A DNA stretch of 63,665 nucleotides, counting the filler, from Octopus bimaculoides (taxonomy: Eukaryota): assembly GCF_001194135.2 (NCBI RefSeq). It is 4 parts of 3 records of this genome, joined end to end, with 100 filler letters (N's around TTAATTAATTAA, not from the genome) between each part and the next. Parts side by side here need not be neighbours in the genome. Positions count along the whole stretch, not along the records: positions 1 to 24,444 come from NC_068983.1; 3 more parts are not named here. One strand, written 5' to 3'. The notes under the pieces were generated by a model. The model was not told the DNA's origin and did not search any database. It saw only the letters and a list, made by a program, of their open reading frames with translations. The position numbers and the translations under genes are program-made. This document shows, piece by piece, positions 1 to 24,400 of the stretch; the stretch's first letter is position 1, and each line of letters begins with the position of its first letter.

Positions 1-490
1 ATATATACACACAACGAAGAAAAAATGAAGAACAGGACAAGTAAACACAGACAACTTCATTAGTTGTCAGCTGTCTATCTACACCTCATTTCGAGCATTC
101 GACAACAATATGAGTCTTCAAAGACTGTTACTCCCATTAATTATAAAATAAAATTTAGGATTTATGGAGGGTCAAATTTGGAAACAACAACATGACAGTG
201 GAGACATACAAGGAAACCGAATGAAAACAGACATGGAGGGTCATTAGACCAGAATGAGAGGAAAATAGCAAATGCTGTGAGAAATATTATTTACAATTTA
301 TGGGAGCAACTGTCTTTGAAGACTCATATTGTCATTGAATGCTCATAATGAGGAGAAGATAGACAGCCGATAACTGGTGAATGGTCCTTTCTCTATGTTT
401 ACTTGTCCTTTTGTCTACTTTTTATCCCATTTGTTTACATATTTCATGTTGTTTGAACTGTTGGTGATGTCCTGTACCCATATATACATG

Positions 491-532
<42 letters not shown>

Positions 533-5010: not shown

Positions 5011-5601
5011 TGATATGAGTAGTGCTTAGTATTTTTACTGTAGAAGCCATACTAGTAATCACTGAGGGGACTGAGAAAGAGAGAGAGATTCAAGGTGTTG
5101 GAGGACATCATTGTTAATAGGTATCTGTAGGTGTGTATGTGTGTATATGTAGATGTCTGAGTGTATGAGTGTGTGTATGCAGATATGTTTGTGTATCGGT
5201 GTCATGATGTGTGTGTGCACATGTTTATGTGTGGATGTGTAAGTGTGTTGGAAACAGAGATGGAAAACAGAAAGACAGACAGACAGAATTAGTTCATGAA
5301 ATATTCAAAAGCCCCCAAAGAAAAATATAACCAAAAACAAATGCAACAATAAACTAATCAGTAAATAAGAAAAAAGTAATAGAGAAGCCAGAGAGAATTG
5401 AGTATATGATCTGATGGCATTTTCCTTCTCTTATAAAGGACAAGTAATTTATTTTATATACCACCATTACAGTACAGATAGTAGTTGATATATGTGTGCA
5501 TGTATGCTTGTATGTATACATAATTATCTACCTATTTATCTACACCACCCCACACACATTTATGCATATATTATACACAGATGTATATGCATATACAGAT
5601 A

Positions 5602-5606
<5 letters not shown>

Positions 5607-5660
<54 letters not shown>
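5607..5660. repeat. (TA)n microsatellite
   Basis: Directly visible. Confidence 0.95.
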
Positions 5661-5669
<9 letters not shown>

Positions 5670-6516
5670 AATAGATATATAGATACAAAGACAGACAGAC
5701 AGACAAACAGACAGGCAAGTGTATATATAGAGAGAGTGAGAGACAAATACCCACACATACATATATCTATACATACATATATGTACACATGTATCAGGAG
5801 TTATTTGAAACAAATTCTAGAAACATTAAATTTACATGCAGTTAACATTGTGTGTGTATGTGTGTGTATGAGTGTGTGTGTGTATGAGTGTGTGTGTGTG
5901 TGTGTGTGTGTACATTTACACACAGAAACATATCGAGAATAAACTCTGTAAATGCTAAACAAAATGTCAAACTACAATACCCTTTCCAAAAGATCAATAC
6001 TCTAGTGGAAACAAATGCACTTACACACATACAACACACACTTGTGTACACGATCACACACATACAATCTTGCATGTAAATACATATATGTTATATGTGT
6101 GTATTTATACATATTGCACCAGAAAATACTGTCCTTTTCTAAGCAACATGACTTTATTCATTGCAATAAATTATTTAAAACCATTCCTAGTTAGTTTTAT
6201 ATTACAATTAAAATGGCACCAACAGCTGTAATAAGTTTCTTACACCAGTTTAAAGATAGAAATGTGTTACAGGGAATGGATGTACATGATTCAGTCAATT
6301 CTGATACATGCCTGGTACTATTTTATCAACCCCAGAATAAAGGAATGCAATGATGACATCTAGGATTAAGGAAGTAGGAAGAAGGACAATCAAATATTAT
6401 TCAAGCAGACTACCATTTCTACCTCTCCACTGTTCTCAACACTATAATAATTATTGTTTCTAATATAGGTACAAGACTGGAAATTTGGTGTGTGTGTGTG
6501 CTTGTGTGTGTGTGTG

Positions 6517-9650: not shown

Positions 9651-10108
9651 GAGAAAGCAACCATACTCTGGGATATGCCAATACACACAGATAAAGAAAT
9701 TAAGGCCAATAGGCCAGATATAGTTGTTAGAGATCATGAAGAAAAAAATGCTTTCTAATTGATGTATCAATACCAGCAGATGACGTTTCCCTAAAAGAAA
9801 TGGAGAAACTTTCAAAATACAAAGACCTGGAAATAGAAGTAACTCGAATGTGGAATCAAAAAACAGAAACAATTCCCATCATAGTAAGCGCCTTAGGTAT
9901 AATAAAAAAATATTCAGACAAATACATGACAAAATCACCAGGACTTACAAATATATATAACATACAGAAAATTGCANNNNNNNNNNATCCTACGCAAAAC
10001 ACTTTCAATACAGGAACCATAAAAGCATCACAGCAAACCACAGCACATACCCAAGGCACAGAGCTGCGCTCGGTAGTGAAGTGAAAGCACGTTATAAAAA
10101 TAAAACTA

Positions 10109-10141
<33 letters not shown>

Positions 10142-10568: not shown

Positions 10569-11053
10569 GAGAAAGCAACCATACTCTGGGATATGTCAAT
10601 AAAGATAGAGAAATCAAGGACAATAGACCAGATATAGTGGTCAGAGATCACCAAGAAAAAAATGCCTCCTAAATGATGTATCAATACCAACAGGTGACAA
10701 TGTATCTCTAAAAGAAACAGAGAAACTCTCAAAATACAAAGATCTAGAAATAGTGGTAACCCAAATGTGGTGTCTAAAAACAGAAACAATCCTTATAATA
10801 ATAGGTGCATTAGGTATGATTAAAAAACATGCAAATACATACATAACCAAAACATCAGGACTTACAAATGTATATAACATACAGAAAATAGCACCACTAG
10901 GCACCACACACGTCCTATGTAAAGCACTTTCAATACAGTGAAAATAAGAGCACCACAATAAACTACAGCATGTGCTCAAGGTACACAGAGCTGCACTCAG
11001 AAATACAGTGAAAGCATGTGATAAAAATAAAACTACTGAATAATAATAATAAT
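10569..11053 (+). mobile_element. R4/Dong-like LINE 3' fragment, copy 2
   Basis: Same 5' start (GAGAAAGCAACCATACTCTGGGATATG) and 3' end (ATAAAAATAAAACTACTGAATAAT) as copy 1; encodes IIGALGMIKK...IQKIAPLGTTHVL. Confidence 0.85.
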
Positions 11054-11595
11054 GACTTCTTTAGCATCAGTTGTGCTTCTCCGCAGTGCAAAGCCCGTAT
11101 TTCATCTAATCTGATTCTGCTCCTAATTGACTGGGCTATAACTTTTCCATAACTTTTATGAACTGGTCCAGTGACTTGATGCCTCTGAAATTACTTCTAT
11201 CTAAGGCATCTCCCTTGCCCTTGTAGCAGCTGACTATAATGCTGTCACCTATATAGTTAATAACCTGGTTAACTATATGGGTGACCAAATTGTATAACTT
11301 CTGAGAGACCAGAGGTTTTCCCTTTCTTCATATCCTTAATTGCTTTATTGTCAACTCGAATAGCTGACCCCTCTCTTGGGTTCACATAGGGAAGACTCTC
11401 TTTCTCCCATTCTCCACATTTAATAGATTTTCACAGTAACACTTCCACATCTCTTTCTTTTCAGAGTCACTAAGTGCAAGCGCACCATTATCCATCTGTA
11501 CACACTTCTGAGCCATTACATCTAATTCTCTCTAATACACTGTCAAGCAATCTGGAACACCTCAAGTCTTTGATCTTCATGCTGTAAGACATTGG

Positions 11596-11881
11596 TGTAG
11601 GAAGATGTCAGTGGCTGGGGAGCTGACTGGAACTTGGGAGCTGAGCAGAAGAGGAAGGGTGCGCAGGTGACATGCACACAGGTGGGGGAAGATTGTGCCC
11701 TTTTTTAATTGGGGAAGCCGTGAGTGCAGGACGTGTCAGTGCTTCGTCGAGGTGAGGGAAAGCAGCTGCTATTTTTAGCGTTTCGGGATGGGTCACGTGG
11801 AAGGATATGTTACTACCCAACAGGTTTGTGCCAACAAAGAGAAAGTAGGTGTCTTACTTCTAATCTCCTGCATTCACTACA
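11596..11881 (+). repeat. Gypsy A 5' LTR (286 bp)
   Basis: TGTAGGAAGA...CATTCACTACA; aligns with 15018-15281 apart from 18-bp and 4-bp indels. Confidence 0.95.
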
Positions 11882-11893
11882 AGCTATTTCAGC
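11882..11893 (+). other. Non-canonical primer-binding site AGCTATTTCAGC
   Basis: Directly abuts the 5' LTR; no TGG; 11/12 complementary to tRNA-Phe nt 1-12 (GCCGAAAUAGCU). The PBS role is inferred from position. Confidence 0.6.
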
Positions 11894-11913
11894 GCTCCAC
11901 ATAAGACGTCACC

Positions 11914-12676
11914 ATGATGGCAGCTAAAATTAGGATCACCAGCGACGTTATCAGGCCCTTTAATGGTGAGGACGATGTAGTGGCCTAGATGCATAAAATC
12001 AGGCTTGTGGCGAGATTGCAAGGCATTAGCGACGTAGCGAGCCTTATGGCACTTTATTTGGAAGGGAGCACATTGACTTTATATCTTGAGATGGATGAAG
12101 AAGAACAACTGAGCGAGGAAAAGATTGAGCAACATCTGAAACAGACTTACACCGCATGTGAGTATACAGCCTTTGTTAAGCTGGGAATGATTAGATGGAT
12201 GGGGAGAGCAGGTAGATGAATACAAGGCAGAGGTGTGTAGGCTGGCCATGCTGGATGGGTTTACGGGAGAAGGCCTGGACAGAGCAGCAATACTGGCATT
12301 CATGAGTGGGTTCCCTGACGATGTAAGGATTCGATTGCAGCAATTGCCCAGGGACAAAAAGATGGCACTGAGCGAACTTGTAGCTCAAGCTCGTGTGTTG
12401 ACGTGAAACACTGGATGGAAAGTGATAGCGATGGTGGTAACGGAGGCGCATAATGACGGACAACGGCCGGAGAAAGATGCGAAGAAGCCTACCATGCAAC
12501 GACAGTGGCCGTTCTCAGGCCAGTGTTTTAAATGTCAGGGGTCATAAATGGCGAGGTAGTGTATGCAACCAGGGCCCATCTGCTATCGATGCAGGAAGTC
12601 AGGGCACATCACCCATGATTGCGACCAGGGAAACGACCATGGGGAAGTTGCTGCCTCTTTCCCCACAAACAAGTAG
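11914..12676 (+). pseudogene. gag: Gypsy A gag (stops and frameshifts) with CCHC zinc knuckles
   Basis: MMAAKIRITSDVIRPFNGEDDVVA*...LYLEG...LYLEM; intact knuckle CYRCRKSGHITHDC; stop TAG at 12674-12676; homologous to the ORF at 20229-20933. Confidence 0.9.
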
Positions 12677-14962
12677 AGGTGCTTGTGGAGACACTGCTTG
12701 TAACTGATGTCGAGGCTGAGGGGAAGACGTTGAAGGCCCTCATGGATACGGGTTGCACAACCACCCTTGTGACTCCAAGGGTGACAAAGAAATGGTATGA
12801 GGCAAGTAGCGTCCAGGTGGTCAACGGCAGCGAAATCCTTATCCCATGAAAGGAGGAGATGGTGCAGCCAACAAAGGGAAAAGTCAGACCGGTGCTGGAC
12901 TTTAGAGAACTGAACGACCATATATCGTGCCACACGGGAGGCAAGGTGACAGACGTTTGCGGTGAGACATTACGTATGTGGAGACAGTCGATCAAGGCAG
13001 CGACAACTGCCGACTTGAAGTTGGCATATTTGCAGCTCCATGTGAGTGACAATCTGTGGCGCTATCAGCTGGTGCGGTACAAGGGCCAGACATACTGTTT
13101 AACCAGGCTGGGTTTCAGACTGAATTCCGCTCCAAAGATCATGGTGACGGTGCTCAAGTCCATCCTAGGGAAAGAGGACAAGATAAGAAAGGCCACCAGT
13201 TCCTACATAAACAACATTTTGGTGGACGAGACTAGTGCCAGCCACCAAGGTAGTGAGACATCTGGAGAAGTTTGGGCTGATTGTGCAGCTACCTGTGTCA
13301 ATGGCGTGGGGAGCTGCACTGGGGCTGAAGCTACGAAGAGATAGATCAGGTGAGTTGGTGTTCCAAAGAGGAAATGAAATCCCAGAGCTGAGTTCCAGCG
13401 TCAGCAGGAGAGAGCTGTTCTCAGTGTGTGGGAAGTTGGTTGGTCACTACCCAATCACTGGATGGCTGCGCACAGCATGCAGTTACACCAAGAGATGAGC
13501 GGACGGGGAGAGTTGGGGACGACAAGGTAGTAGGGGGTGGTGGCGATGATGTGGGAAATCCTAGAGAGGACAAGAGCGGAAGACCCGGTCAGGGGGAAAT
13601 GGTATTTGCCCAAGACAGAATGCAGGACCATTTGGTGTGATGCTAGCAGTACAGTGATAGGGGTTGTGTTGGAGATCGAAGGTGTTGAGGTGGAGGATGC
13701 AGCCTGGCTACAGAAAGCAGACAACTTTAACCACATCAATGTCGCCGAATTAGACGCGGTGTTGAAGGGGTTGAACTTGACCCAGAAATGGGGGCTGTGC
13801 TCAATTGAAATCTGGACGGATTTGGCCACCATGCTCGGCTGGGTAGGATCGGTGATCACCAGTGAGGGGAGAGTTCGGATGAAAGGTGCTACAGAGATGT
13901 TGGTGAAGTACCACCTAGGAGTTCTACTAGAGCTGATTGCTGAGTTTGGACTGAAGCTGAACCTGGTTTCCATGCCTTCAGAGAGAAACAGGGCAGATGC
14001 ATTGACCAGGGTGAAAAGGGTGTGGTTGGAGGAGCCAAAGGAGGCAAAGAAAGGGATAGCTGTGGCATGTCGGTTGGATGACTCCGAACTGAAGAGACTA
14101 CATCCTATGCATCATTTGTGGGTGGAAAGGACCCTGTATCTTGCAAAGATGTTTGATGCAGACGTCACTAGGAGAAGCATCCAGAAAGTGGTCGGGAGCT
14201 GTGGCAGGTGCCAGTCCATTGACCCTGCTCCATGTGGGCATGAACAAGGAAACCTTTCAGTAGAACACAACTAGAAGAGACTAGCTGTGGATGTGATGCA
14301 CTACCGTCAGGGAATATATCTCTCCATGGTCAACTGCGGGCCGGATAGCCATTTGGAGGGAGATGAGGACAGGCATTGTTGATAAGATTGTGCAGATTTT
14401 GAACGGGATATTTTTAGAGAGGGGTCCCGTGGAAGAACTGCTAATGAACAACAGGGTGGCATTTCATTTGGAAGTGTTGAGGGATATGCTCAACTGGTGG
14501 AAAGTGCGTCACTTGTTCAGAGCGGTGTATAGGCTGAGTGGTAACGGAATCGTAGAGAGGCACCATCAGACAATCAAGGCCATGGTGGAAAGAGGGCACA
14601 TTTCACCACTGGAAGCACTTTTCTGGTATAACATGTCTCTCCAATCCAGACAAGCTGAAGAATCTGTGCCACACAGAGCAGTATTTAAATATGAATGGAG
14701 GCATCCCAGTAAAGCACCGGAGTGCCACAAGGAAGAGAAGGAACCTGCCTGCATGAAAATAGGGGAGGAAGTTTGGGTTAAGCCAATGAAGGCACGCTGT
14801 ATGTCTCAGTGGAGCAGAGGAACGGTGATGGCAGTCAGTTCCAGAAACGTCTCCATGGATGGAATGCTGCATCACGTTTTGGACCTTTGCAGGATTATCG
14901 CTTCGTCAGATGACAATTGTGGAGGGGAGGAGAAAGAAGTGCTTAGCTTGAGGAGATCTTGA
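12619..14962 (+). pseudogene. pol: Gypsy A pol: protease, RT, RNase H, integrase (fragmented)
   Basis: PR ALMDTG; RT KVRPVLDFRELN, AYLQL, LTRLGF, and YINNI (decayed YxDD); RH WCDAS, AELDAV, NRADALTR; IN HHCC (HPMHH..CGRC), LAVDV, LMNN (decayed D), NGIVERHHQTIK, VWVKP. Confidence 0.92.
12628..12682 (+). promoter_or_regulatory. -1 ribosomal frameshift signal: G GGA AAC slippery heptamer plus H-type pseudoknot
   Basis: The heptamer is in gag frame and pol is in the -1 frame; 5-nt spacer; stem 1 TGGGGAA (12640-12646) / TTCCCCA (12659-12665); stem 2 GCCTCT (12653-12658) / AGAGGT (12675-12680). Confidence 0.7.
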
Positions 14963-15003
14963 TGCGTAAGGCGCCTGCCTGGTTGGATGGTGGACTTCAA
15001 CGT

Positions 15004-15017
15004 GGAGTAGGGGGAGA
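15004..15017 (+). other. Polypurine tract GGAGTAGGGGGAGA
   Basis: Immediately upstream of the 3' LTR. Confidence 0.85.
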
Positions 15018-15281
15018 TGTGGGATGACGTCAGTGGCTGGGGAACTGACCAGAAGAGGAAGGGCACACAGGTGATGCACGCACAGGCAGAGGAAGATTGC
15101 ACCCTTTTTCAGGGAAGCCGTGAGTGCAAGACGTGTCAGTGCTTTGTTGAGGTGAGGGAAAGCAGCTGCTATTTTTAGCATTTCAGGACAGACTACATGG
15201 AAGGATACGTTACTACCCGACAGGTTTGCACCAACGAAGAGAAGGTAGGTGTCTTACTTCCAATCTCCTGCATTCACTACA
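15018..15281 (+). repeat. Gypsy A 3' LTR (264 bp)
   Basis: TGTGGGATGA...CATTCACTACA followed by the TSD ATTGG. Confidence 0.95.
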
Positions 15282-16288
15282 ATTGGTAAACCTCTTTCTT
15301 CCTACTTCTGCCCTTGTTAGATAAACCTATCACCTAGCTTTCCTCTTGACCACTTGATATTGCTCTTTGCTGCCTCCATTTCTTCAGTCTTTTCAACCCT
15401 ATCTCTTATTTCACATTCTCTTGATTTATCAGTTTATTGCAACAAATACTGGATCTCTCACTCTCTGCCATACATTCATATTGGAGGGGTAAAATTCTAT
15501 ATTATTTGGGTATACTATTTGGAGATAAGCATTTATATCGTTTATCTGTCCTTTCCAGTTTATACTTGTCAAAATATTCAGTGGACTACCCATGCAACAT
15601 TATCACAATGCTTTGTATCTGTGTTGAGGTAAGTGGCAGCATTCACATAGCAAATGTGCACACTTCTCTGTTTTGGAAAGAGTCAGTTATTTTGTTTTTA
15701 TGGAATTCAATATAGTTTTTTTTTTGTTTTTATGAACCTGTTCTTGCTCCCTAAATTTTTAGTAACAACCCAATTTTTAGTAACAACCAAGATTTATCCA
15801 TGCTTACATACTCATTCATCTCTCTGAAAAAGATGGCCATAGGTCAAAACAGCCTGGTAGCCTCTATGGGGTAACTTGACCTTCTAGAAATAGTAGCAGA
15901 ATTCTTCTCAAATCATGCTTTACTATCTTAAGCAAGGAAAGAACATGTAGCGAATAAAAAGATTGTGTGTAGAGATAACAACAATGATGAATTATATTAA
16001 ATTTTTCCCTTCATTTCTTACATTCAAATATAGACTTGCTAAAACAAATCAATGGTGATAACACTATACACAATTTGAGAATATATGTAAAATTGGACAG
16101 AGTTCAAACATAATAAATGTAACAGATCTTAATTCACAACAACAATCAAAGCAAATTTACATAAATGTTTTTGTGAGACTCAGTGTAGTTGTTTTCATGT
16201 TTTACAGTCAACTGGATAATGTGTGTAGAAAAAGATGTTCAAACAGACTTTTTTGTTTCTTTGTAAAGCCAATTAAATAATATGCTGT

Positions 16289-16296
16289 ATAAATGT

Positions 16297-16358
<62 letters not shown>
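16289..16358. repeat. (GT)n microsatellite
   Basis: Directly visible. Confidence 0.95.
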
Positions 16359-16361
<3 letters not shown>

Positions 16362-18324
16362 CATGCACGCACGCGCGAGTGTGTGTGTTTAAATGTCTTG
16401 CAAAATCAGTCATATGATATGTTGTAGAATTGTACTGTTTCCTTTTTATTGTTCCACATGTGCCTGCAGATCATAACACCGAAGCAGAAGAGAGAAAAGT
16501 TAACATTACTATTTATCAAAGTGGTCCCAATAGATATCACCAAAAATTTCACTTGAGATAGTTGAAAGAAAATTTATTCTGTTCCATGTTCTCAAATGTG
16601 CTTACTTTATTGTTTCTTTTGGGAAGACAAAAAGAACTGGGAACTTCAGCTGCTAACTTATCTGATGCTCAGTGAATGAAACAAAAGAAAACAGTCCGCA
16701 GCAAACAGTTTGATTTTTAAAGGATTTTTAGCCCACTAATTTAATATTATGTTCGGTCATTCTTCGATTGCTATTAGAATCAATCCAGTGAGGAACAACA
16801 ACAACTCGTGTGAAATTGTGAAGACTTCATGTACCTGAGAAATTTATTCTGATACATGATGAGAGCATTTACACAGCATGTACATTATCATTCAATAGAA
16901 CAGAAGGGAATTTGAATAAGGGAATGTTTTCATCTTGCAATATTCCATGATTAGTGAAGGGGATTGAAGAAGATTCAATCACCAAAAGGTTGACTCATAG
17001 CTGGAATAGAGATGGAGAACACCATAGCTAGTTGCAGGCAATGTGCAAGAGAAAGAGAGTGTGACCTGTCCATGCAGGTCTTTTTATAACTAGGTAACAA
17101 GTACCATCTCGTTGCTAGCAATGTGACAGGGGAGATAATTATAGCTGACTGCCTTTGAAACCTGATGTCACTGATTCAAATAAGGTTGCCTACAGATTTC
17201 TCTTTAAACAATTAAAAGGTGGCTCACAGTTTACTTGTTTCTGATTAGTAGAAAATTAACATATAACAAAATAGTGAATCTGTCCATAGCCAAATGGATT
17301 TATTACAGACACATTCCATAACATAGTCCTACATAGCCTTAGAAAGACTAACTGATCACAGCTAGAATGCCTTTCCTCAATCAAGGTTGACATAGAGCTA
17401 AACAGCATTAGCTGTCCATATATTTTTCTTTTCTAAATCTCTGTATTTGTTTTCAAGATATATTTTCTTAAATTTCCCTGCTGCCATATTCTTCAACCTT
17501 AAATCTATTCAAGCTTTCCTAATATTTTCCTACAGCACTCTTACACTATTCTTTACATAACATACTACATTATTTTCCGTAAGACGTGTACATTCTTCAC
17601 AATAAATTAATCCCTTCCCATTTTATTATTTTTTTTTACAGAATTTATAGACCCAATAGACACCACTTTGAGGATTTTTGAGTTTTATCTAAACTAACAT
17701 TCTCTTCTTTATTCCATCTTAGCAATCCTCAAGTTTACTTCAAAAGAGATGTAGCCTATGCAATGATGAAAAGTGACTGTTTGTCATTTAGAATTAAGCA
17801 CCAAAAGTAAAAGAGTCATGCTTTTATCCTGGAAGATTTTTATACTCTATCATAAGATAATTTTGTTTTCCATTTATTTACACTCTTTGCAATAACTTTC
17901 TTTATTCTCTTTTATTTCTATTATCTCTGAACATTTTATTATCCTAAAATGAGGGTTTATGTCATAAGATGTCATGATTCAGGCCATTGTGAGGTATGTA
18001 TATTTCTTGAATTTGTGGAGCAAAAATTTATCAGAAATTGGTCGTTTGCATCTTTACTCTTACTTAAGAATGTTTTCTACTCTACTGGTAACATAACCTG
18101 GCTGTCAACTATCATTTGTATAGTATCTGTCAATTGTCTACTACATTGCCTTTGGATTGTTCAAGCATACACAGTCTATTCTACTAAATGTTCTCTACCA
18201 TATTGATAGCATTCAATTATTTGTGGCAGCCAGTCAGTTTTTAAGACCAATACATTTGTAATCTTCAGTACTATGAACTTTCGAGTGAGGGATTTTACTT
18301 CAGCATATTTTCATCTGCTCTTCT

Positions 18325-21816: not shown

Positions 21817-22248
21817 TAGGCACAGGCGTGATTGTTTGATAAGAATTGTGCTTCCCAACCACATGGTTCCAGGTTCATCCCACTGCGTAGCACCTTGGAC
21901 AAATGTCTTCTATTATAGCCTCAGGCTGACTGAAGCCTTGTGAATGTATTTAGTAGATGGAAACTAAAAGAAGCCCATTGTATGTGTGTGTGTGTGTGTG
22001 TGTGTGTGAGTGTGTATGTTTATATCTACGTGTGTGCTTTTATGTATGTGTTTATCCACCACCACCACTTGACAACTGTGTCAGTGTGTTTACACCCTCA
22101 TAACTTAGTGGTTCAGCAAAAGATACCAATAGAATAAGTACTAGACAAACAAAATAAATACTAAGGTTGATTTGTTCAAGTAAAACCTTCAAGGAATTGC
22201 CCCATCATGGCCACAGTCATATGACTGAAACAAGTAAAAGATAAAAGA
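21817..22248 (+). mobile_element. SINE family 2 (tRNA-like head, CCTTGG.CAA core, internal (TG)n, GACTGAAACAAGTAAAAG tail)
   Basis: Homologous to the copies at 31057-31544, 43983-44335 and 54976-55048; visibly CpG-decayed. Confidence 0.85.
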
Positions 22249-23022: not shown

Positions 23023-23202
23023 NNNNNNNNNNNNNNNNNNNNNNNNNNNNNNNNNNNNNNNNNNNNNNNNNNNNNNNNNNNNNNNNNNNNNNNNNNNNNN
23101 NNNNNNNNNNNNNNNNNNNNNNNNNNNNNNNNTATATATACAGAGAGAGAGAGAAATATATGTATATGTGTGTGTGTGTGTGTATATGTATGTATGTGTG
23201 TG

Positions 23203-23234
<32 letters not shown>

Positions 23235-23235
<1 letters not shown>

Positions 23236-24400
23236 GTAAGAACGACCGTGCAAACCCAAAAAGGAGAAATGGTGACGAATGGAAAAAACAGGACTCCTTT
23301 TATTTAAATGCGTCACACGGTCGAACACAAAAATTATATCAAGAGATGATATACAAATATGTTATACTACGATAACATAGTGATTTCGTAAATTGTCAGT
23401 AATGAAGACGATAGAAGGCAACCGCATGAGATGAATAACAGAAATATTTATTGTGACATTAAAATGTATGTCTGTGTGTGAGTGTGAATGCGACATAATG
23501 AAAACATAATAAAAGACAGACTGTCGTATAAAGAAAAGAGTGTGTGTGAGTGATACATGTATGTGTATGCGTTATATACAGCAGATAAAAAGAGTCAGTA
23601 ACACGTGTGAGCATTTGCCGGTTTGTTGAGTACACAATAGGAAGAGTCTGTATGAAAGAAGTTAATGCGTGTGTGTGGCAGTGCGATCACTAGTTGTGAT
23701 GTTGTGGCTTCCATGCCGGGCCGGGTTCTTGTTATACAGATGTTCGTCGCTGGCTGGGCTCTTGTCTATTATTNNNNNNNNNNTTATACAGATGTTCGTC
23801 GCTGGCTGGGCTCTTGTCTATTATTTATCGTGGTGAAGAAGAATCACACAAACAGAATCGAAGAGAGAGAGAGATGTGCCGCGGTAGTTTCGTTGCTGGT
23901 GTACGTAGAAATCATGTTGATGATATTGGCGATGCTGGTGGCGAATCTTGTAGTTCGTAGTTAAAGTCGTGTTGACGCTGACGGCGATGATGCTGGTTAG
24001 TAATCATAGAGTCGTGTTGCTGATGGCGACGTCGGTGGTAGTCGTAGCTGGAGATGCTGTTGATGTAGTCGCTGGAACTGCTGCTGCTGATCTGTGTGGT
24101 ACACGGAACAGGTCCCTAAGAGATCTGAACCGAGACCAATTTGCCGGGTATAATTTGGGCTATTTATAGTTGATGGTAGGCTCCCAAAGGCATCAGAAAA
24201 ATACTCTATCACATGACCTTATTAGGGGCCGCAGTTGGTCAGTTTGCGTTCTGGCGGGAACGGTTCGAAGCAGTTGCCGCTTCAAATAATAATTAGTCAT
24301 GTGATAACAGGGAAAGATGTTTTCCACTACGCCCGCGCTTGTTTATATATAATAGTGAGAAGATGGTTTGTTTGTAATTAATGGTGATAGGTACTAATTT
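23235..24400 (-). mobile_element. LTR-C copy 3, reverse orientation; far end unclear near the scaffold end
   Basis: Reverse complement of the 7119-8351 element over most of its length (TGTAAGAACGACCGTGC...; TTGCCGCTTCAAATAATAAT); abuts (TA)n. Confidence 0.85.

What the first reader, a model, noticed from the sequence alone, without database searches (positions are those of the whole stretch)
11882..11893. Gypsy primer-binding site complementary to the 5' end (nt 1-12) of tRNA-Phe rather than a tRNA 3' end
Seen: the TSD and the paired LTRs fix the 5' LTR end at 11881. The next bases are AGCTATTTCAGC, with no TGG, so no CCA-3' tRNA can prime here. Established: metazoan cytosolic tRNA-Phe(GAA) begins GCCGAAAUAGCU-CAG, whose complement is AGCTATTTCGGC. 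That is 11/12, and the mismatch (CG to CA) is the CpG decay seen throughout this element. Complementarity stops exactly at tRNA nt 1 on one side and at the LTR edge on the other. Inference: minus-strand synthesis was primed by a 12-nt 5' fragment of tRNA-Phe cut in the D-arm. This would resemble Tf1 self-priming (RNase H cutting after an 11-nt duplex) or copia/Ty5 internal tRNA priming, but with a different geometry. I do not know whether it has been described for this lineage.
Basis: partly seen in the sequence, partly recalled or inferred. Interest (0 to 1): 0.85.

Follow-up and report, generated by a model that had tools for sequence, protein, structure and literature searches.

The report
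Retroelement primer site matching tRNA 5' end
A dead octopus LTR retrotransposon belongs to an animal-wide family whose primer-binding site pairs with the first 12 bases of a host tRNA rather than its 3' end, which implies an apparently undescribed way of starting reverse transcription.

Summary
In the window, 5-bp target-site duplications (ATTGG) fix the 5' LTR end at 11881. The next 12 nt, AGCTATTTCAGC, match the complement of tRNA-Phe nt 1-12 (GCCGAAATAGCT) at 11 of 12 positions.

- **Relatives with mapped LTR ends:** Relatives were found by protein similarity only. In all 11 loci where I could place the LTR end, a tRNA-like 12-mer starts directly after the terminal ACA. The hosts are octopus, cuttlefish, bryozoan, Hydra, barnacle, crab, mantis shrimp, whipworm and one unidentified. 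Six copies read AGCTATTTCGGC exactly.
- **Where conservation ends:** It stops at position 12.
- **Other tRNAs:** Divergent clades from metagenomes carry the exact complement of nt 1-12 of tRNA-Lys(CUU) or tRNA-Lys(UUU), or a tRNA-Met(e)-like 12-mer. The rule is therefore "nt 1-12 of a tRNA", not tRNA-Phe alone.
- **Alternatives excluded:** There is no TGG-type site. No complement of the site lies in the LTR or elsewhere in the element, so Tf1-type self-priming is ruled out.

Best model: the tRNA is cut between nt 12 and 13, U12 primes minus-strand DNA, and run-off at tRNA nt 1 sets the site's length. This is inferred, not shown.

The "Gypsy" label holds only in a broad sense, because the polymerase is very divergent. 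I found no description in the searchable literature. The window copy is an old, broken member of the family.

The parts
11591..11595 (.). 5' target-site duplication ATTGG
   Evidence: Identical 5-mer at 15282-15286, directly outside the two LTRs. A 5-bp duplication is also read at both ends in nine relatives.
11596..11881 (+). 5' LTR (286 bp, TGTAGG...CACTACA); carries a ~22-bp internal duplication near 11615-11650 relative to the 3' LTR
   Evidence: Direct repeat with 15018-15281. 86.4% identity, 35 of 36 differences are transitions.
11882..11893 (+). Primer-binding site AGCTATTTCAGC. It is the complement of tRNA-Phe nt 1-12 with one CG-to-CA change. The family form is AGCTATTTCGGC.
   Evidence: tRNA-Phe 5' sequence from PMC10505166 and PMC7038984.
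11914..12219 (+). N-terminal part of gag (MMAAKIRITSDVIRPFNGEDD...), broken by an in-frame TAG at 11986-11988. Frameshifted gag remnants, including a CFKCQG zinc-knuckle remnant, continue to about 12600.
   Evidence: ORF list and translations. The gag start is orthologous to that of relatives, a few to ~90 nt after the 12-mer.
12619..12849 (+). Aspartic protease remnant (active-site DTG at 12745-12753)
   Evidence: Weak Pfam Asp_protease_2 / gag-asp_proteas hits. The same families hit 16-18 of 20 relatives.
12859..13498 (+). Reverse transcriptase, split over two frames. Fingers/palm lie at 12859-13344, with the catalytic motif decayed to YINN. The thumb (Pfam DUF7047) lies in the frame of 13235-13498.
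   Evidence: Translations. Family consensus SYIDDIxV and weak RVT_1 hits in 20 of 20 relatives. DUF7047 in relatives.
13537..14274 (+). RNase H domain followed by the integrase HHCC zinc finger (longest intact ORF, 245 aa)
   Evidence: Weak Pfam RVT_3 hit. 60 homologues, 80% identity to an Octopus sinensis protein.
14363..14962 (+). Integrase catalytic core and C-terminal region remnant
   Evidence: ORF. The orthologous ORFs in relatives hit Pfam rve.
15004..15017 (+). Remnant of the polypurine tract (GGAGTAGGGGGAGA). The conserved hairpin plus G-run seen in relatives is missing here (about 26 nt lost).
   Evidence: Comparison with L001, L003, L004, L005, L008, L089, L091, L092 and L037.
15018..15281 (+). 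3' LTR (264 bp, TGTGGG...CACTACA)
15282..15286 (.). 3' target-site duplication ATTGG

Best explanation
The 12 nt directly after the 5' LTR are the element's primer-binding site. They pair with nucleotides 1-12 of a host tRNA: the 5' strand of the acceptor stem, nt 8-9, and the first three bases of the D stem. In the octopus copies that tRNA is tRNA-Phe.

**Shown**
- The site lies exactly between the LTR's terminal ACA and a point 12 nt downstream.
- It is the only conserved non-coding block there across at least five animal phyla.
- Its sequence is the exact complement of documented 5' ends of tRNA-Phe, tRNA-Lys(CUU) and tRNA-Lys(UUU) in different clades.
- Position 1 of the site changes from A to C in the tRNA-Met(e)-like clade, where the inferred tRNA nt 12 is G instead of U.
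- There is no 3'-end (TGG) site and no self-complement.

**Inferred**
- The annealed tRNA is cut between nt 12 and 13. The most likely agent is the element's own RNase H acting at the end of the 12-bp RNA:RNA duplex, a fixed distance from the RNA 5' end. Tf1 does the same with the first 11 nt of its own mRNA.
- The 3'-OH of nt 12 primes minus-strand strong-stop DNA into U5.
- Plus-strand strong-stop DNA later copies the 12-nt primer and runs off at the tRNA's mature 5' end. That would explain why the site is exactly 12 nt long and ends at tRNA nt 1.
- Because the site is re-copied from the primer in each cycle, young copies match perfectly. Lineages can also switch among look-alike tRNAs of the form GCC-NNNN-UAGCU.
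- All the tRNAs used have A9 rather than G9, which avoids the pairing-blocking m1G9 modification.

The window copy is a dead member of the family. Its site is mutated (CG to CA), its polypurine-tract hairpin is deleted, and its reading frames are broken.
For: - **LTR edges and the 12-mer:** The 12-mer directly follows the LTR end in 12 copies from 10 host genera plus one unidentified host; 5-bp duplications were read at both ends in the window and nine relatives.
- **Information profile:** About 2 bits for the terminal ACA. 2.0 bits at eight of the 12 positions, 1.6 at positions 2 and 10, and 1.0-1.2 at positions 7-9 (tRNA nt 4-6). Then 0.1-0.6 bits.
- **Unbiased sample:** 80 metagenome loci were chosen by RNase H/integrase protein similarity only. 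The pattern AGCT[AG]NNNNGGC occurs 55 times on the coding strand and 4 times on the other. The recurrent variants (45 of the 55 hits) sit ~2 kb upstream of the RNase H match, or the equivalent distance downstream in permuted contigs, and are mostly preceded by ACA.
- **Exact tRNA matches:**
  - AGCTATTTCGGC is the complement of tRNA-Phe nt 1-12.
  - L051 AGCTAGCCGGGC is the complement of tRNA-Lys(CUU) nt 1-12.
  - L082 AGCTATCCGGGC is the complement of tRNA-Lys3 nt 1-12.
  - L062 and L079 CGCTACCGAGGC match tRNA-Met(e) nt 1-12 at 11 of 12 positions.
- **No self-complement:**
- **No tRNA-Phe 3'-end site:**
- **Duplex stability:** -18.7 kcal/mol for the tRNA-Phe 12-mer and -23.5 to -25.5 for the tRNA-Lys types.
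- **Element-encoded RNase H:** The polymerase has an RNase H directly after the thumb (model with pLDDT 80.9; matches).
- **Precedents:** Internal tRNA cleavage (copia, Ty5) and a 5'-terminal RNA segment used as primer (Tf1, Tj1) are both described (PMC5371799; PMC4600332).
Against: - No experiment or small-RNA/cDNA data were available. Cleavage at nt 12/13, the nuclease responsible and actual priming are untested.
- The octopus tRNA-Phe gene could not be fetched. Its 5' end is inferred from the identical human and Drosophila sequences.
- Several common variants could not be assigned to a tRNA. Their inferred tRNA 5' ends are GCCUAGAUAGCU, GCCUCGAUAGCU, GCCGCGAUAGCU, GCCGUGAUAGCU, GCCGGGAUAGCU and GCCGAGGUAGCU (one search found nothing for the five searched; none for GCCUCGAUAGCU).
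- A 12-nt primer is short. Opening the acceptor and D stems of a folded tRNA needs a chaperone.
- If the integrase trims two bases, the primer 3' end could be at nt 10 rather than nt 12. The A-to-C change at position 1 of the site in the tRNA-Met(e)-like clade argues for pairing through nt 12.
- A minority of loci with enough sequence showed no recognisable site, or an altered one such as the 13-nt form in L037.
Confidence: 0.75

Rival explanations
1. The pairing is the same, but the primer is a pre-existing short 5' tRNA fragment made by a host nuclease. The element then recruits a ready-made ~12-nt 5' fragment instead of cutting an intact tRNA itself.
For: Short 5' tRNA fragments cut in the D loop or stem are a known small-RNA class (established knowledge; compare PMC3710361, listed). 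Nothing in the sequence data shows who makes the cut. The review attributes the Ty5 internal cut to a host enzyme.
Against: - The described 5' fragments are mostly 14 nt or longer (established knowledge). An exact 12-nt end would be needed in hosts from many phyla and for several tRNAs.
- The constant 12-nt length across tRNA types fits an element-encoded measuring enzyme better.
Confidence: 0.15
2. Tf1-type self-priming: the 12-mer pairs with the 5' end of the element's own transcript, which is then cut to give the primer.
For: The duplex length (11-12 nt) and its position next to U5 resemble Tf1 and Tj1.
Against: - No complement within 3 mismatches in the eight 5' LTRs tested; duplex energies are within the shuffled range.
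- Only 1 of 54 sites has a complement with 2 or fewer mismatches within 6 kb, and it lies outside the element.
- The 12-mer stays constant while the LTRs are unalignable between phyla.
Confidence: 0.02
3. The primer is the 3' end of some other conserved small RNA that happens to end in ...GCCGAAAUAGCU-3'. Alternatively, the 12-mer is a cis signal (integrase end recognition, packaging) with only a chance resemblance to tRNA.
For: The primer was not identified directly. The first two bases (AG) could also serve end recognition.
Against: - Three different clade-specific 12-mers are exact complements of three different documented tRNA 5' ends. Each exact match has a chance of about 6e-8.
- The variable positions are tRNA nt 4-7 (acceptor stem), while the near-universal U8, A9, G10 and C11 are fixed.
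- Complementarity always stops at tRNA nt 1.
Confidence: 0.05
4. The tRNA 5' strand anneals to the 12-mer only to position or package the tRNA. DNA synthesis starts from the tRNA's natural CCA-3' end at another site.
For: Ty1 and Ty3 use bipartite sites with extra tRNA contacts.
Against: - No tRNA-Phe 3'-end complement lies next to U5 in seven Phe-type copies. The only recurrent weak matches (3 mismatches) lie within the gag coding region ~120-140 nt downstream in the three cephalopod relatives (L001, L003, L008).
- A primer annealed away from the U5 edge would not reproduce the observed LTR end.
Confidence: 0.03

Closest known systems
Tf1 / Tj1 self-priming (Schizosaccharomyces; Tf1/sushi group)
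   Same: - A short (11-nt) 5'-terminal segment of an RNA anneals to a site directly next to U5.
- The primer 3' end is created by an endonucleolytic cut at the end of that duplex.
- The site's length equals the length of the 5'-terminal segment (PMC4600332; the cleavage detail is established knowledge).
   Different: - Here the 5'-terminal segment belongs to a host tRNA acting in trans, not to the element's own mRNA.
- No complement exists in the LTR.
- The duplex is 12 nt, not 11.
- The elements are not Tf1/sushi relatives by any test run here.
copia / Ty5 'half-tRNA' priming
   Same: A host tRNA is used after an internal cut, so the primer 3' end is not the CCA end (PMC5371799).
   Different: - copia and Ty5 pair with the anticodon stem-loop of initiator tRNA-Met, and the primer is a fragment of about 39 nt.
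- Here pairing is with nt 1-12, the cut lies in the D stem, the tRNAs are elongator Phe/Lys/Met-like, and the whole primer is base-paired.
Canonical 3'-end tRNA primer-binding site of retroviruses, Ty1, Ty3 and most Gypsy, BEL and Copia elements
   Same: - The position next to U5 is the same.
- A host tRNA is used.
- The clade-specific choice of tRNA and the apparent primer switching are shared.
   Different: - No TGG and no complementarity to the CCA end.
- 12 nt instead of about 18 nt (or 8-10 nt).
- The opposite end of the tRNA is used, and a cut is required.
Recently named deep LTR lineages: Troyka, Kuafuorterviruses, Odin
   Same: Like these, this is a widely distributed animal LTR lineage that standard classification places poorly.
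   Different: - Troyka has 3-bp duplications and CG...CG ends. Ours has 5-bp duplications and TG...CA ends.
- Kuafuorterviruses have IADD/VADD/LADD and are 5-6 kb long. Ours has YIDD, and internal regions run 3.1-4.4 kb.
- Odin has two RNase H domains and is reported only in sea anemones. Our model shows a single RNase H after the thumb.
- The Odin and Troyka papers do not mention a primer-binding site (term searches); the Kuafuortervirus Results section does not either.

Membership tests
Canonical tRNA 3'-end primed LTR element | Site begins TGG and is complementary to the 3' CCA end of a tRNA | tested here: not met
   The bases after the LTR are AGCTAT... in all 12 edge-defined copies. No tRNA-Phe 3'-end complement lies next to U5.
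Tf1-type self-priming element | Site complementary to the 5' end of the element's own transcript (within the 5' LTR) | tested here: not met
   No complement within 3 mismatches in eight LTRs; duplex energies within the shuffled range. 53 of 54 sites lack any complement with 2 or fewer mismatches within 6 kb.
Tf1-type self-priming element | RNase H cut at the end of a ~11-nt RNA:RNA duplex releases the primer | not testable with these tools
   Needs biochemistry. Here the only support is the constant 12-nt geometry.
copia/Ty5 half-tRNA priming | Site complementary to the anticodon stem-loop of initiator tRNA-Met | tested here: not met
   The 12-mers are complements of nt 1-12 of tRNA-Phe, tRNA-Lys(CUU) and tRNA-Lys(UUU).
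copia/Ty5 half-tRNA priming | Host tRNA cut internally to create the primer 3' end | not testable with these tools
   Required by the geometry, because the 3' end of the pairing lies at tRNA nt 12, but not observed.
Ty3/Gypsy (Metaviridae) in the broad sense | Domain order PR-RT-RNase H-IN, with an HHCC plus DDE integrase | tested here: met
   ORF order and Pfam hits in the window and relatives. The model shows PR, RT, thumb, then a single RNase H.
Ty3/Gypsy (Metaviridae) in the broad sense | TG...CA LTR ends and 4-6 bp target duplication | tested here: met
   TGTGG...ACA ends and 5-bp duplications read in ten copies.
Ty3/Gypsy (Metaviridae) in the strict sense | RT and RNase H group with Gypsy RT/RNase H families | tested here: inconclusive
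   - RVT_1 hits are only weak (28.3 bits against a 29.6-bit cut-off for the one member tabulated). RNase H hits RVT_3/RNase_H, not the Gypsy RT_RNaseH families.
- The best PDB sequence-profile hits are foamy-virus PR-RT (1.7e-9) and HIV RT. Ty3 is not in the 60 listed.
- The best-superposing fold match is cauliflower mosaic virus RT (TM 0.69).
- No phylogeny with reference RTs could be built.
Troyka | 3-bp duplication and CG...CG termini | tested here: not met
   5-bp duplication and TG...CA ends, against the definition in PMC12440569.
Kuafuorterviruses | IADD/VADD/LADD catalytic motif; 5-6 kb | tested here: not met
   The family consensus is SYIDDIxV. The window copy is 3.7 kb, and internal regions in relatives run 3.1-4.4 kb, against PMC11673190.

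The most novel reading that the evidence does not exclude
This is a pan-metazoan, so far unnamed lineage of compact LTR retroelements, found in Cnidaria, Nematoda, Arthropoda, Mollusca and Bryozoa. It starts reverse transcription from the first 12 nucleotides of a host elongator tRNA. The element's own RNase H releases the primer by a cut measured from the tRNA's 5' end, which is Tf1's mechanism transferred from the element's own mRNA to a host tRNA. Its primer-binding site is rewritten from the tRNA in each cycle, so lineages hop among tRNAs that begin GCC-NNNN-UAGCU (Phe, Lys, others).
Probability: 0.5. Interest if true: 0.85.

Novelty: new variant of a known kind. Interest (0 to 1): 0.8.

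Why it matters
- **A further priming mode.** The textbook list for LTR retroelements has three modes: tRNA 3' end, half-tRNA cut in the anticodon loop, and self-priming. A fourth mode, the 5'-terminal 12 nt of a tRNA, would link the tRNA-dependent and Tf1-type mechanisms. It would also bear on how priming evolved.
- **Annotation.** LTR annotation programs look for complements of tRNA 3' ends (established knowledge). They would therefore report these elements as lacking a primer-binding site. The motif ACA|AGCTANNNNGGC is a simple diagnostic for a family that is widespread in animal genomes and metagenomes.
- **Host tRNA fragments.** 5' tRNA fragments, or oligonucleotides mimicking them, would compete with or mimic the primer. 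This parallels the known targeting of conventional sites by 3' tRNA fragments.
- **Testability.** The hypothesis can be tested directly with a short RNA, tRNA-Phe and one recombinant enzyme.

Tried and rejected
- **tRNA genes and Rfam.** ARAGORN found no tRNA gene in the window or the first eight loci; a local ARAGORN run over the 88 loci then held printed nothing. Rfam found nothing in the window. No host tRNA could therefore be read directly.
- **Viral contigs.** They hold no relative.
- **Literature on the 12-mers.** String searches for five unassigned 12-mers and for GCCTCGATAGCTCAG found nothing useful. My recollection that nematode tRNA-Phe begins GCCUCGAUAGCU, which would fit the Trichuris copy exactly, could not be documented. 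It is not used as evidence.
- **Literature on the mechanism.** Searches for a site complementary to a tRNA 5' end, for DUF7047 and for AGCTATTTCGGC found only tRNA probes and reviews of tRNA fragments. All 10 searches are used. Subscription journals and Repbase notes were not searchable, so prior description cannot be excluded.
- **Classification by sequence.** Single sequences gave no PDB hit. The RNase H/integrase profile gave none either. Source names of 180 homologues are all uninformative.
- **Dual RNase H idea.** I considered a retrovirus-like dual RNase H with DUF7047 as the tether. The model shows DUF7047 as three helices in the thumb position, followed by a single RNase H, so I dropped it.
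- **Extended tRNA contacts.** The bases after position 12 differ between copies, so contacts downstream of the site are unlikely.
- **Loci without a site.** Several metagenome loci with no recognisable site are either too short upstream or show no tRNA-like 12-mer at the expected place. L037 has a 13-nt variant.
- **Housekeeping.** Working copies of the fetched loci that I wrote to the scratch folder for BLAST were deleted. No element was extracted, assembled or printed whole.
Full report
**1. What is in the window**

Positions 11596-15281 hold a 3.7-kb LTR retroelement flanked by the 5-bp duplication ATTGG at 11591-11595 and 15282-15286. The 5' LTR runs 11596-11881 and the 3' LTR runs 15018-15281.

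Between the LTRs lie remnants, in this order:
- gag, starting at 11914, with an in-frame stop at 11986
- an aspartic protease (DTG at 12745)
- a reverse transcriptase (RT) whose catalytic motif has decayed to YINN
- an RNase H
- an HHCC/DDE integrase

All of these are split by frameshifts. The LTRs are 86.4% identical, and 35 of 36 differences are transitions, so the copy is old and dead.

There is no TGG.

**2. The match to tRNA-Phe**

The reverse complement of the site, GCTGAAATAGCT, differs at one base from GCCGAAATAGCT. I documented that sequence rather than relying on memory. A human tRNA-Phe(GAA) forward primer reads GCCGAAATAGCTCAGTTGGGAG (PMC10505166). A Drosophila tRNA-Phe 5' probe reads GCTCTCCCAACTGAGCTATTTCGGC (PMC7038984). 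A deuterostome and an ecdysozoan therefore share nt 1-25. This makes the same 5' end very likely in molluscs, although I could not fetch an octopus tRNA gene.

**3. Relatives chosen without reference to the motif**

The 245-aa RNase H/integrase ORF finds homologues in Octopus sinensis, O. bimaculoides, Acanthosepion, Oratosquilla, Trichuris and Watersipora. An RT profile adds Hydra, Chionoecetes, Amphibalanus, Pycnogonum and Trichinella. I fetched the DNA around these genes and found each LTR pair by self-alignment. I then read the duplications.

Where both LTR ends could be read, the LTR is TGT...ACA with a 5-bp duplication. The 12 nt after ACA are listed below.

| Locus | Host | 12 nt after ACA |
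|---|---|---|
| L001, L008 | O. sinensis (two families) | AGCTATTTCGGC |
| L002 | O. bimaculoides | AGCTATTTCGGC |
| L005 | Watersipora | AGCTATTTCGGC |
| L089 | Hydra | AGCTATTTCGGC |
| L092 | Amphibalanus | AGCTATTTCGGC |
| L003 | Acanthosepion | ACCTATTTCGGC |
| L004 | Oratosquilla | AGCTATCTAGGC |
| L090 | Trichuris | AGCTATCGAGGC |
| L091 | Chionoecetes | AGCTATCGAGGC |
| L006 | unidentified host | AGCTATTCCGGC |

Two loci are less complete. L002's LTR ends fall in assembly gaps, so no duplication could be read there. L006 ends in ATA rather than ACA, and its two flanking 5-mers differ at one base.

The LTRs and the leader sequences cannot be aligned between phyla. The information profile is close to 2 bits for ACA and for most of the 12 positions. 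It dips to 1.0-1.2 bits at positions 7-9, which pair with tRNA nt 4-6. It falls to background at position 13.

**4. A larger unbiased sample**

A protein-pattern scan of metagenome contigs returned 80 loci.
- The pattern AGCT[AG]NNNNGGC occurs 55 times on the coding strand and 4 times on the other strand.
- The recurrent variants, 45 of the 55 hits, sit at a fixed distance from the pol genes. Most are preceded by ACA and are followed within a few to tens of bases by the gag ATG.
- The recurrent forms correspond to tRNA-like 5' ends GCC-GAAA/UAGA/GCGA/GUGA/GGGA/GAGG/UCGA-UAGCU.

More divergent clades carry other 12-mers:
- L051: AGCTAGCCGGGC
- L082: AGCTATCCGGGC
- L062 and L079: CGCTACCGAGGC

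The first two are exact complements of nt 1-12 of tRNA-Lys(CUU) (GCCCGGCUAGCU, PMC12140204) and of tRNA-Lys3 (PMC1797187). The third matches tRNA-Met(e), GCCTCGTTAGCG, at 11 of 12 positions. In that third type the first base of the site is C instead of A, matching G12 instead of U12. This is a co-variation that supports pairing right up to nt 12.

The rule is therefore general. The site is the complement of nt 1-12 of a tRNA, with the near-universal U8, A9, G10 and C11 fixed and the acceptor-stem positions variable.

**5. Alternatives tested**

- **Self-priming.** None of the eight 5' LTRs tested contains the complement of its own site within 3 mismatches. Duplex energies against the LTR lie within the shuffled distribution. 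Of 54 sites, only one has a complement with 2 or fewer mismatches within 6 kb, and it lies outside the element.
- **Hidden conventional site.** No complement of the tRNA-Phe 3' end lies next to U5. The only recurrent weak matches lie within the gag coding region in the three cephalopod relatives.
- **Chance.** Three independent exact 12-mer matches to documented tRNA 5' ends exclude it.

**6. Mechanism (inferred)**

An RNA annealed to this site can prime synthesis into U5 only if its 3'-OH lies at the base paired with position 1 of the site, which is tRNA nt 12. The tRNA must therefore be cut between nt 12 and 13, inside the D stem.

The constant 12-nt length, whatever the tRNA, suggests an enzyme that measures from the RNA 5' end or cuts at the duplex end. 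Tf1's RNase H does this after the 11-nt duplex formed by its own mRNA 5' end (PMC4600332; the cleavage detail is established knowledge). The family's polymerase carries an RNase H directly after the thumb (model pLDDT 80.9).

The other boundary of the site is explained by run-off. Plus-strand strong-stop DNA copies the primer to the tRNA's mature 5' end, so the regenerated site is exactly 12 nt. By analogy with retroviruses, the site would be partly re-templated by the primer in each cycle. This accounts for two things. Young copies match perfectly, and lineages move among tRNAs that share GCC...UAGCU, because a look-alike tRNA with 8-10 matches can misprime and convert the site.

All the tRNAs used have A9. 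tRNAs with G9 often carry m1G9, which blocks pairing (established knowledge; inference). The 12-bp duplexes are predicted at -18.7 kcal/mol for Phe and -23.5 to -25.5 kcal/mol for Lys.

Who makes the cut, the element's RNase H or a host nuclease producing 5' fragments, cannot be decided here.

**7. What kind of element**

The domain order (PR-RT-RNase H-IN), the TG...CA ends and the 5-bp duplication fit Ty3/Gypsy in the broad sense. The family is nevertheless poorly placed.
- Pfam RVT_1 hits are weak in all 20 members scanned. The one member tabulated scores 28.3 bits against a 29.6-bit cut-off.
- The RNase H hits RVT_3/RNase_H, not the Gypsy RT_RNaseH families.
- The thumb is the uncharacterised DUF7047.
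- An RT profile finds foamy-virus PR-RT (E = 1.7e-9) and HIV RT ahead of anything else in the PDB.
- The predicted structure aligns over its full length with foamy-virus PR-RT. It superposes best on cauliflower mosaic virus RT (TM 0.69).
- It is not Troyka (3-bp duplications, CG...CG ends).
- It is not a Kuafuortervirus ([ILV]ADD motif, 5-6 kb).
- It does not show Odin's dual RNase H.

I could not build a reference phylogeny, so "Gypsy" remains a broad label.

**8. Novelty**

The known priming modes are summarised in PMC5371799: native tRNA 3' end (with bipartite sites in Ty1 and Ty3), half-tRNA (copia; Ty5, cut in the anticodon loop), and tRNA-independent self-priming (Tf1). None uses the tRNA 5' end.

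Ten full-text searches found no description of such a site. The library lacks most subscription journals and Repbase reports, so an earlier description cannot be ruled out.

I rate this as a new variant of a known kind. It is tRNA-dependent priming of an LTR element with a new geometry that combines features of copia/Ty5 and Tf1.

**9. Verdict**

The priming chemistry itself remains to be shown.

Noticed in passing
window 15004-15017; L001 7475-7500, L003, L004, L005, L008, L089, L091, L092, L037 1660-1686: Directly upstream of the 3' LTR, relatives share a short perfect hairpin followed by a G-run. Examples are TGATCTTTAAGATCA-GGGTGGCG|TGTGG, GATCCTTGAGGATC-AGGAGGGGA|TGTG and AAGAACTTAGTTCTT-GGGGAGA|TG. 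This looks like a structured polypurine-tract module. The window copy has lost the hairpin, apparently through a ~26-nt deletion between two TGTG repeats.
   Followed up: partly
L009-L088 (metagenome contigs): Many relatives sit on ~3.5-4.8 kb contigs that are circular permutations of one element (...IN - one LTR - 12-mer - gag...). Some have identical sequence at both contig ends. This looks like LTR-collapsed assemblies, but one-LTR circles or tandem arrays are not excluded.
   Followed up: no
family-wide (A3, A4; model m96ac2c409d3e): The family is widespread in animals (Hydra, Trichuris, Trichinella, crabs, barnacle, sea spider, mantis shrimp, cephalopods, bryozoan), but every source name is 'uncharacterized'. 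Pfam DUF7047 corresponds to a three-helix thumb between the RT palm and a single RNase H. The closest PDB sequence-profile hits are foamy-virus PR-RT.
   Followed up: partly
window 11615-11650: The 5' LTR carries a ~22-bp internal duplication (GGGGAGCTGACTGGAACTTGGGAGCTGAGCAGAAG, against GGGGAACTGACCAGAAG in the 3' LTR).
   Followed up: no
window 9689-10126 and 10603-11053: Two tandem copies (76-89% identical, spacing ~920 bp) of another repeat. It encodes a conserved peptide (MEKLSKYKDLEIEVTRMWNQKTETIPIIVSALGIIKK...), probably the tail of a different transposable element. The LTR element is inserted just downstream, next to a minus-strand ORF fragment of unknown origin (11382-11516).
   Followed up: no
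window 290-501 and 1028-1256: Another pair of direct repeats (84-91% identical, spacing ~740-755 bp) of unknown nature.
   Followed up: no
window 5100-5950, 16290-16370, 21980-22030, 23113-23240: Long (TG)n, (TA)n and (GACA)n microsatellite tracts. There are also N-runs (assembly gaps) near 9977-9988 and 23113-23132.
   Followed up: no
L037 1932-1944: One metagenome copy has a 13-nt site, AGCTATCATCGGC. Either it is a 1-nt insertion in a decayed copy, or it pairs with a tRNA of different length at the 5' strand. An AATAAA lies ~40 nt before the LTR end of this copy, which suggests a very short U5.
   Followed up: no
L004 (Oratosquilla), L091 (Chionoecetes), L092 (Amphibalanus): Three crustaceans carry three different 12-mers, with inferred tRNA nt 4-7 of UAGA, UCGA and GAAA. 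The same UAGA form dominates one clade of metagenome loci. The variant therefore follows the element clade rather than the host, which suggests that different tRNAs are used rather than host-specific tRNA-Phe variants.
   Followed up: partly
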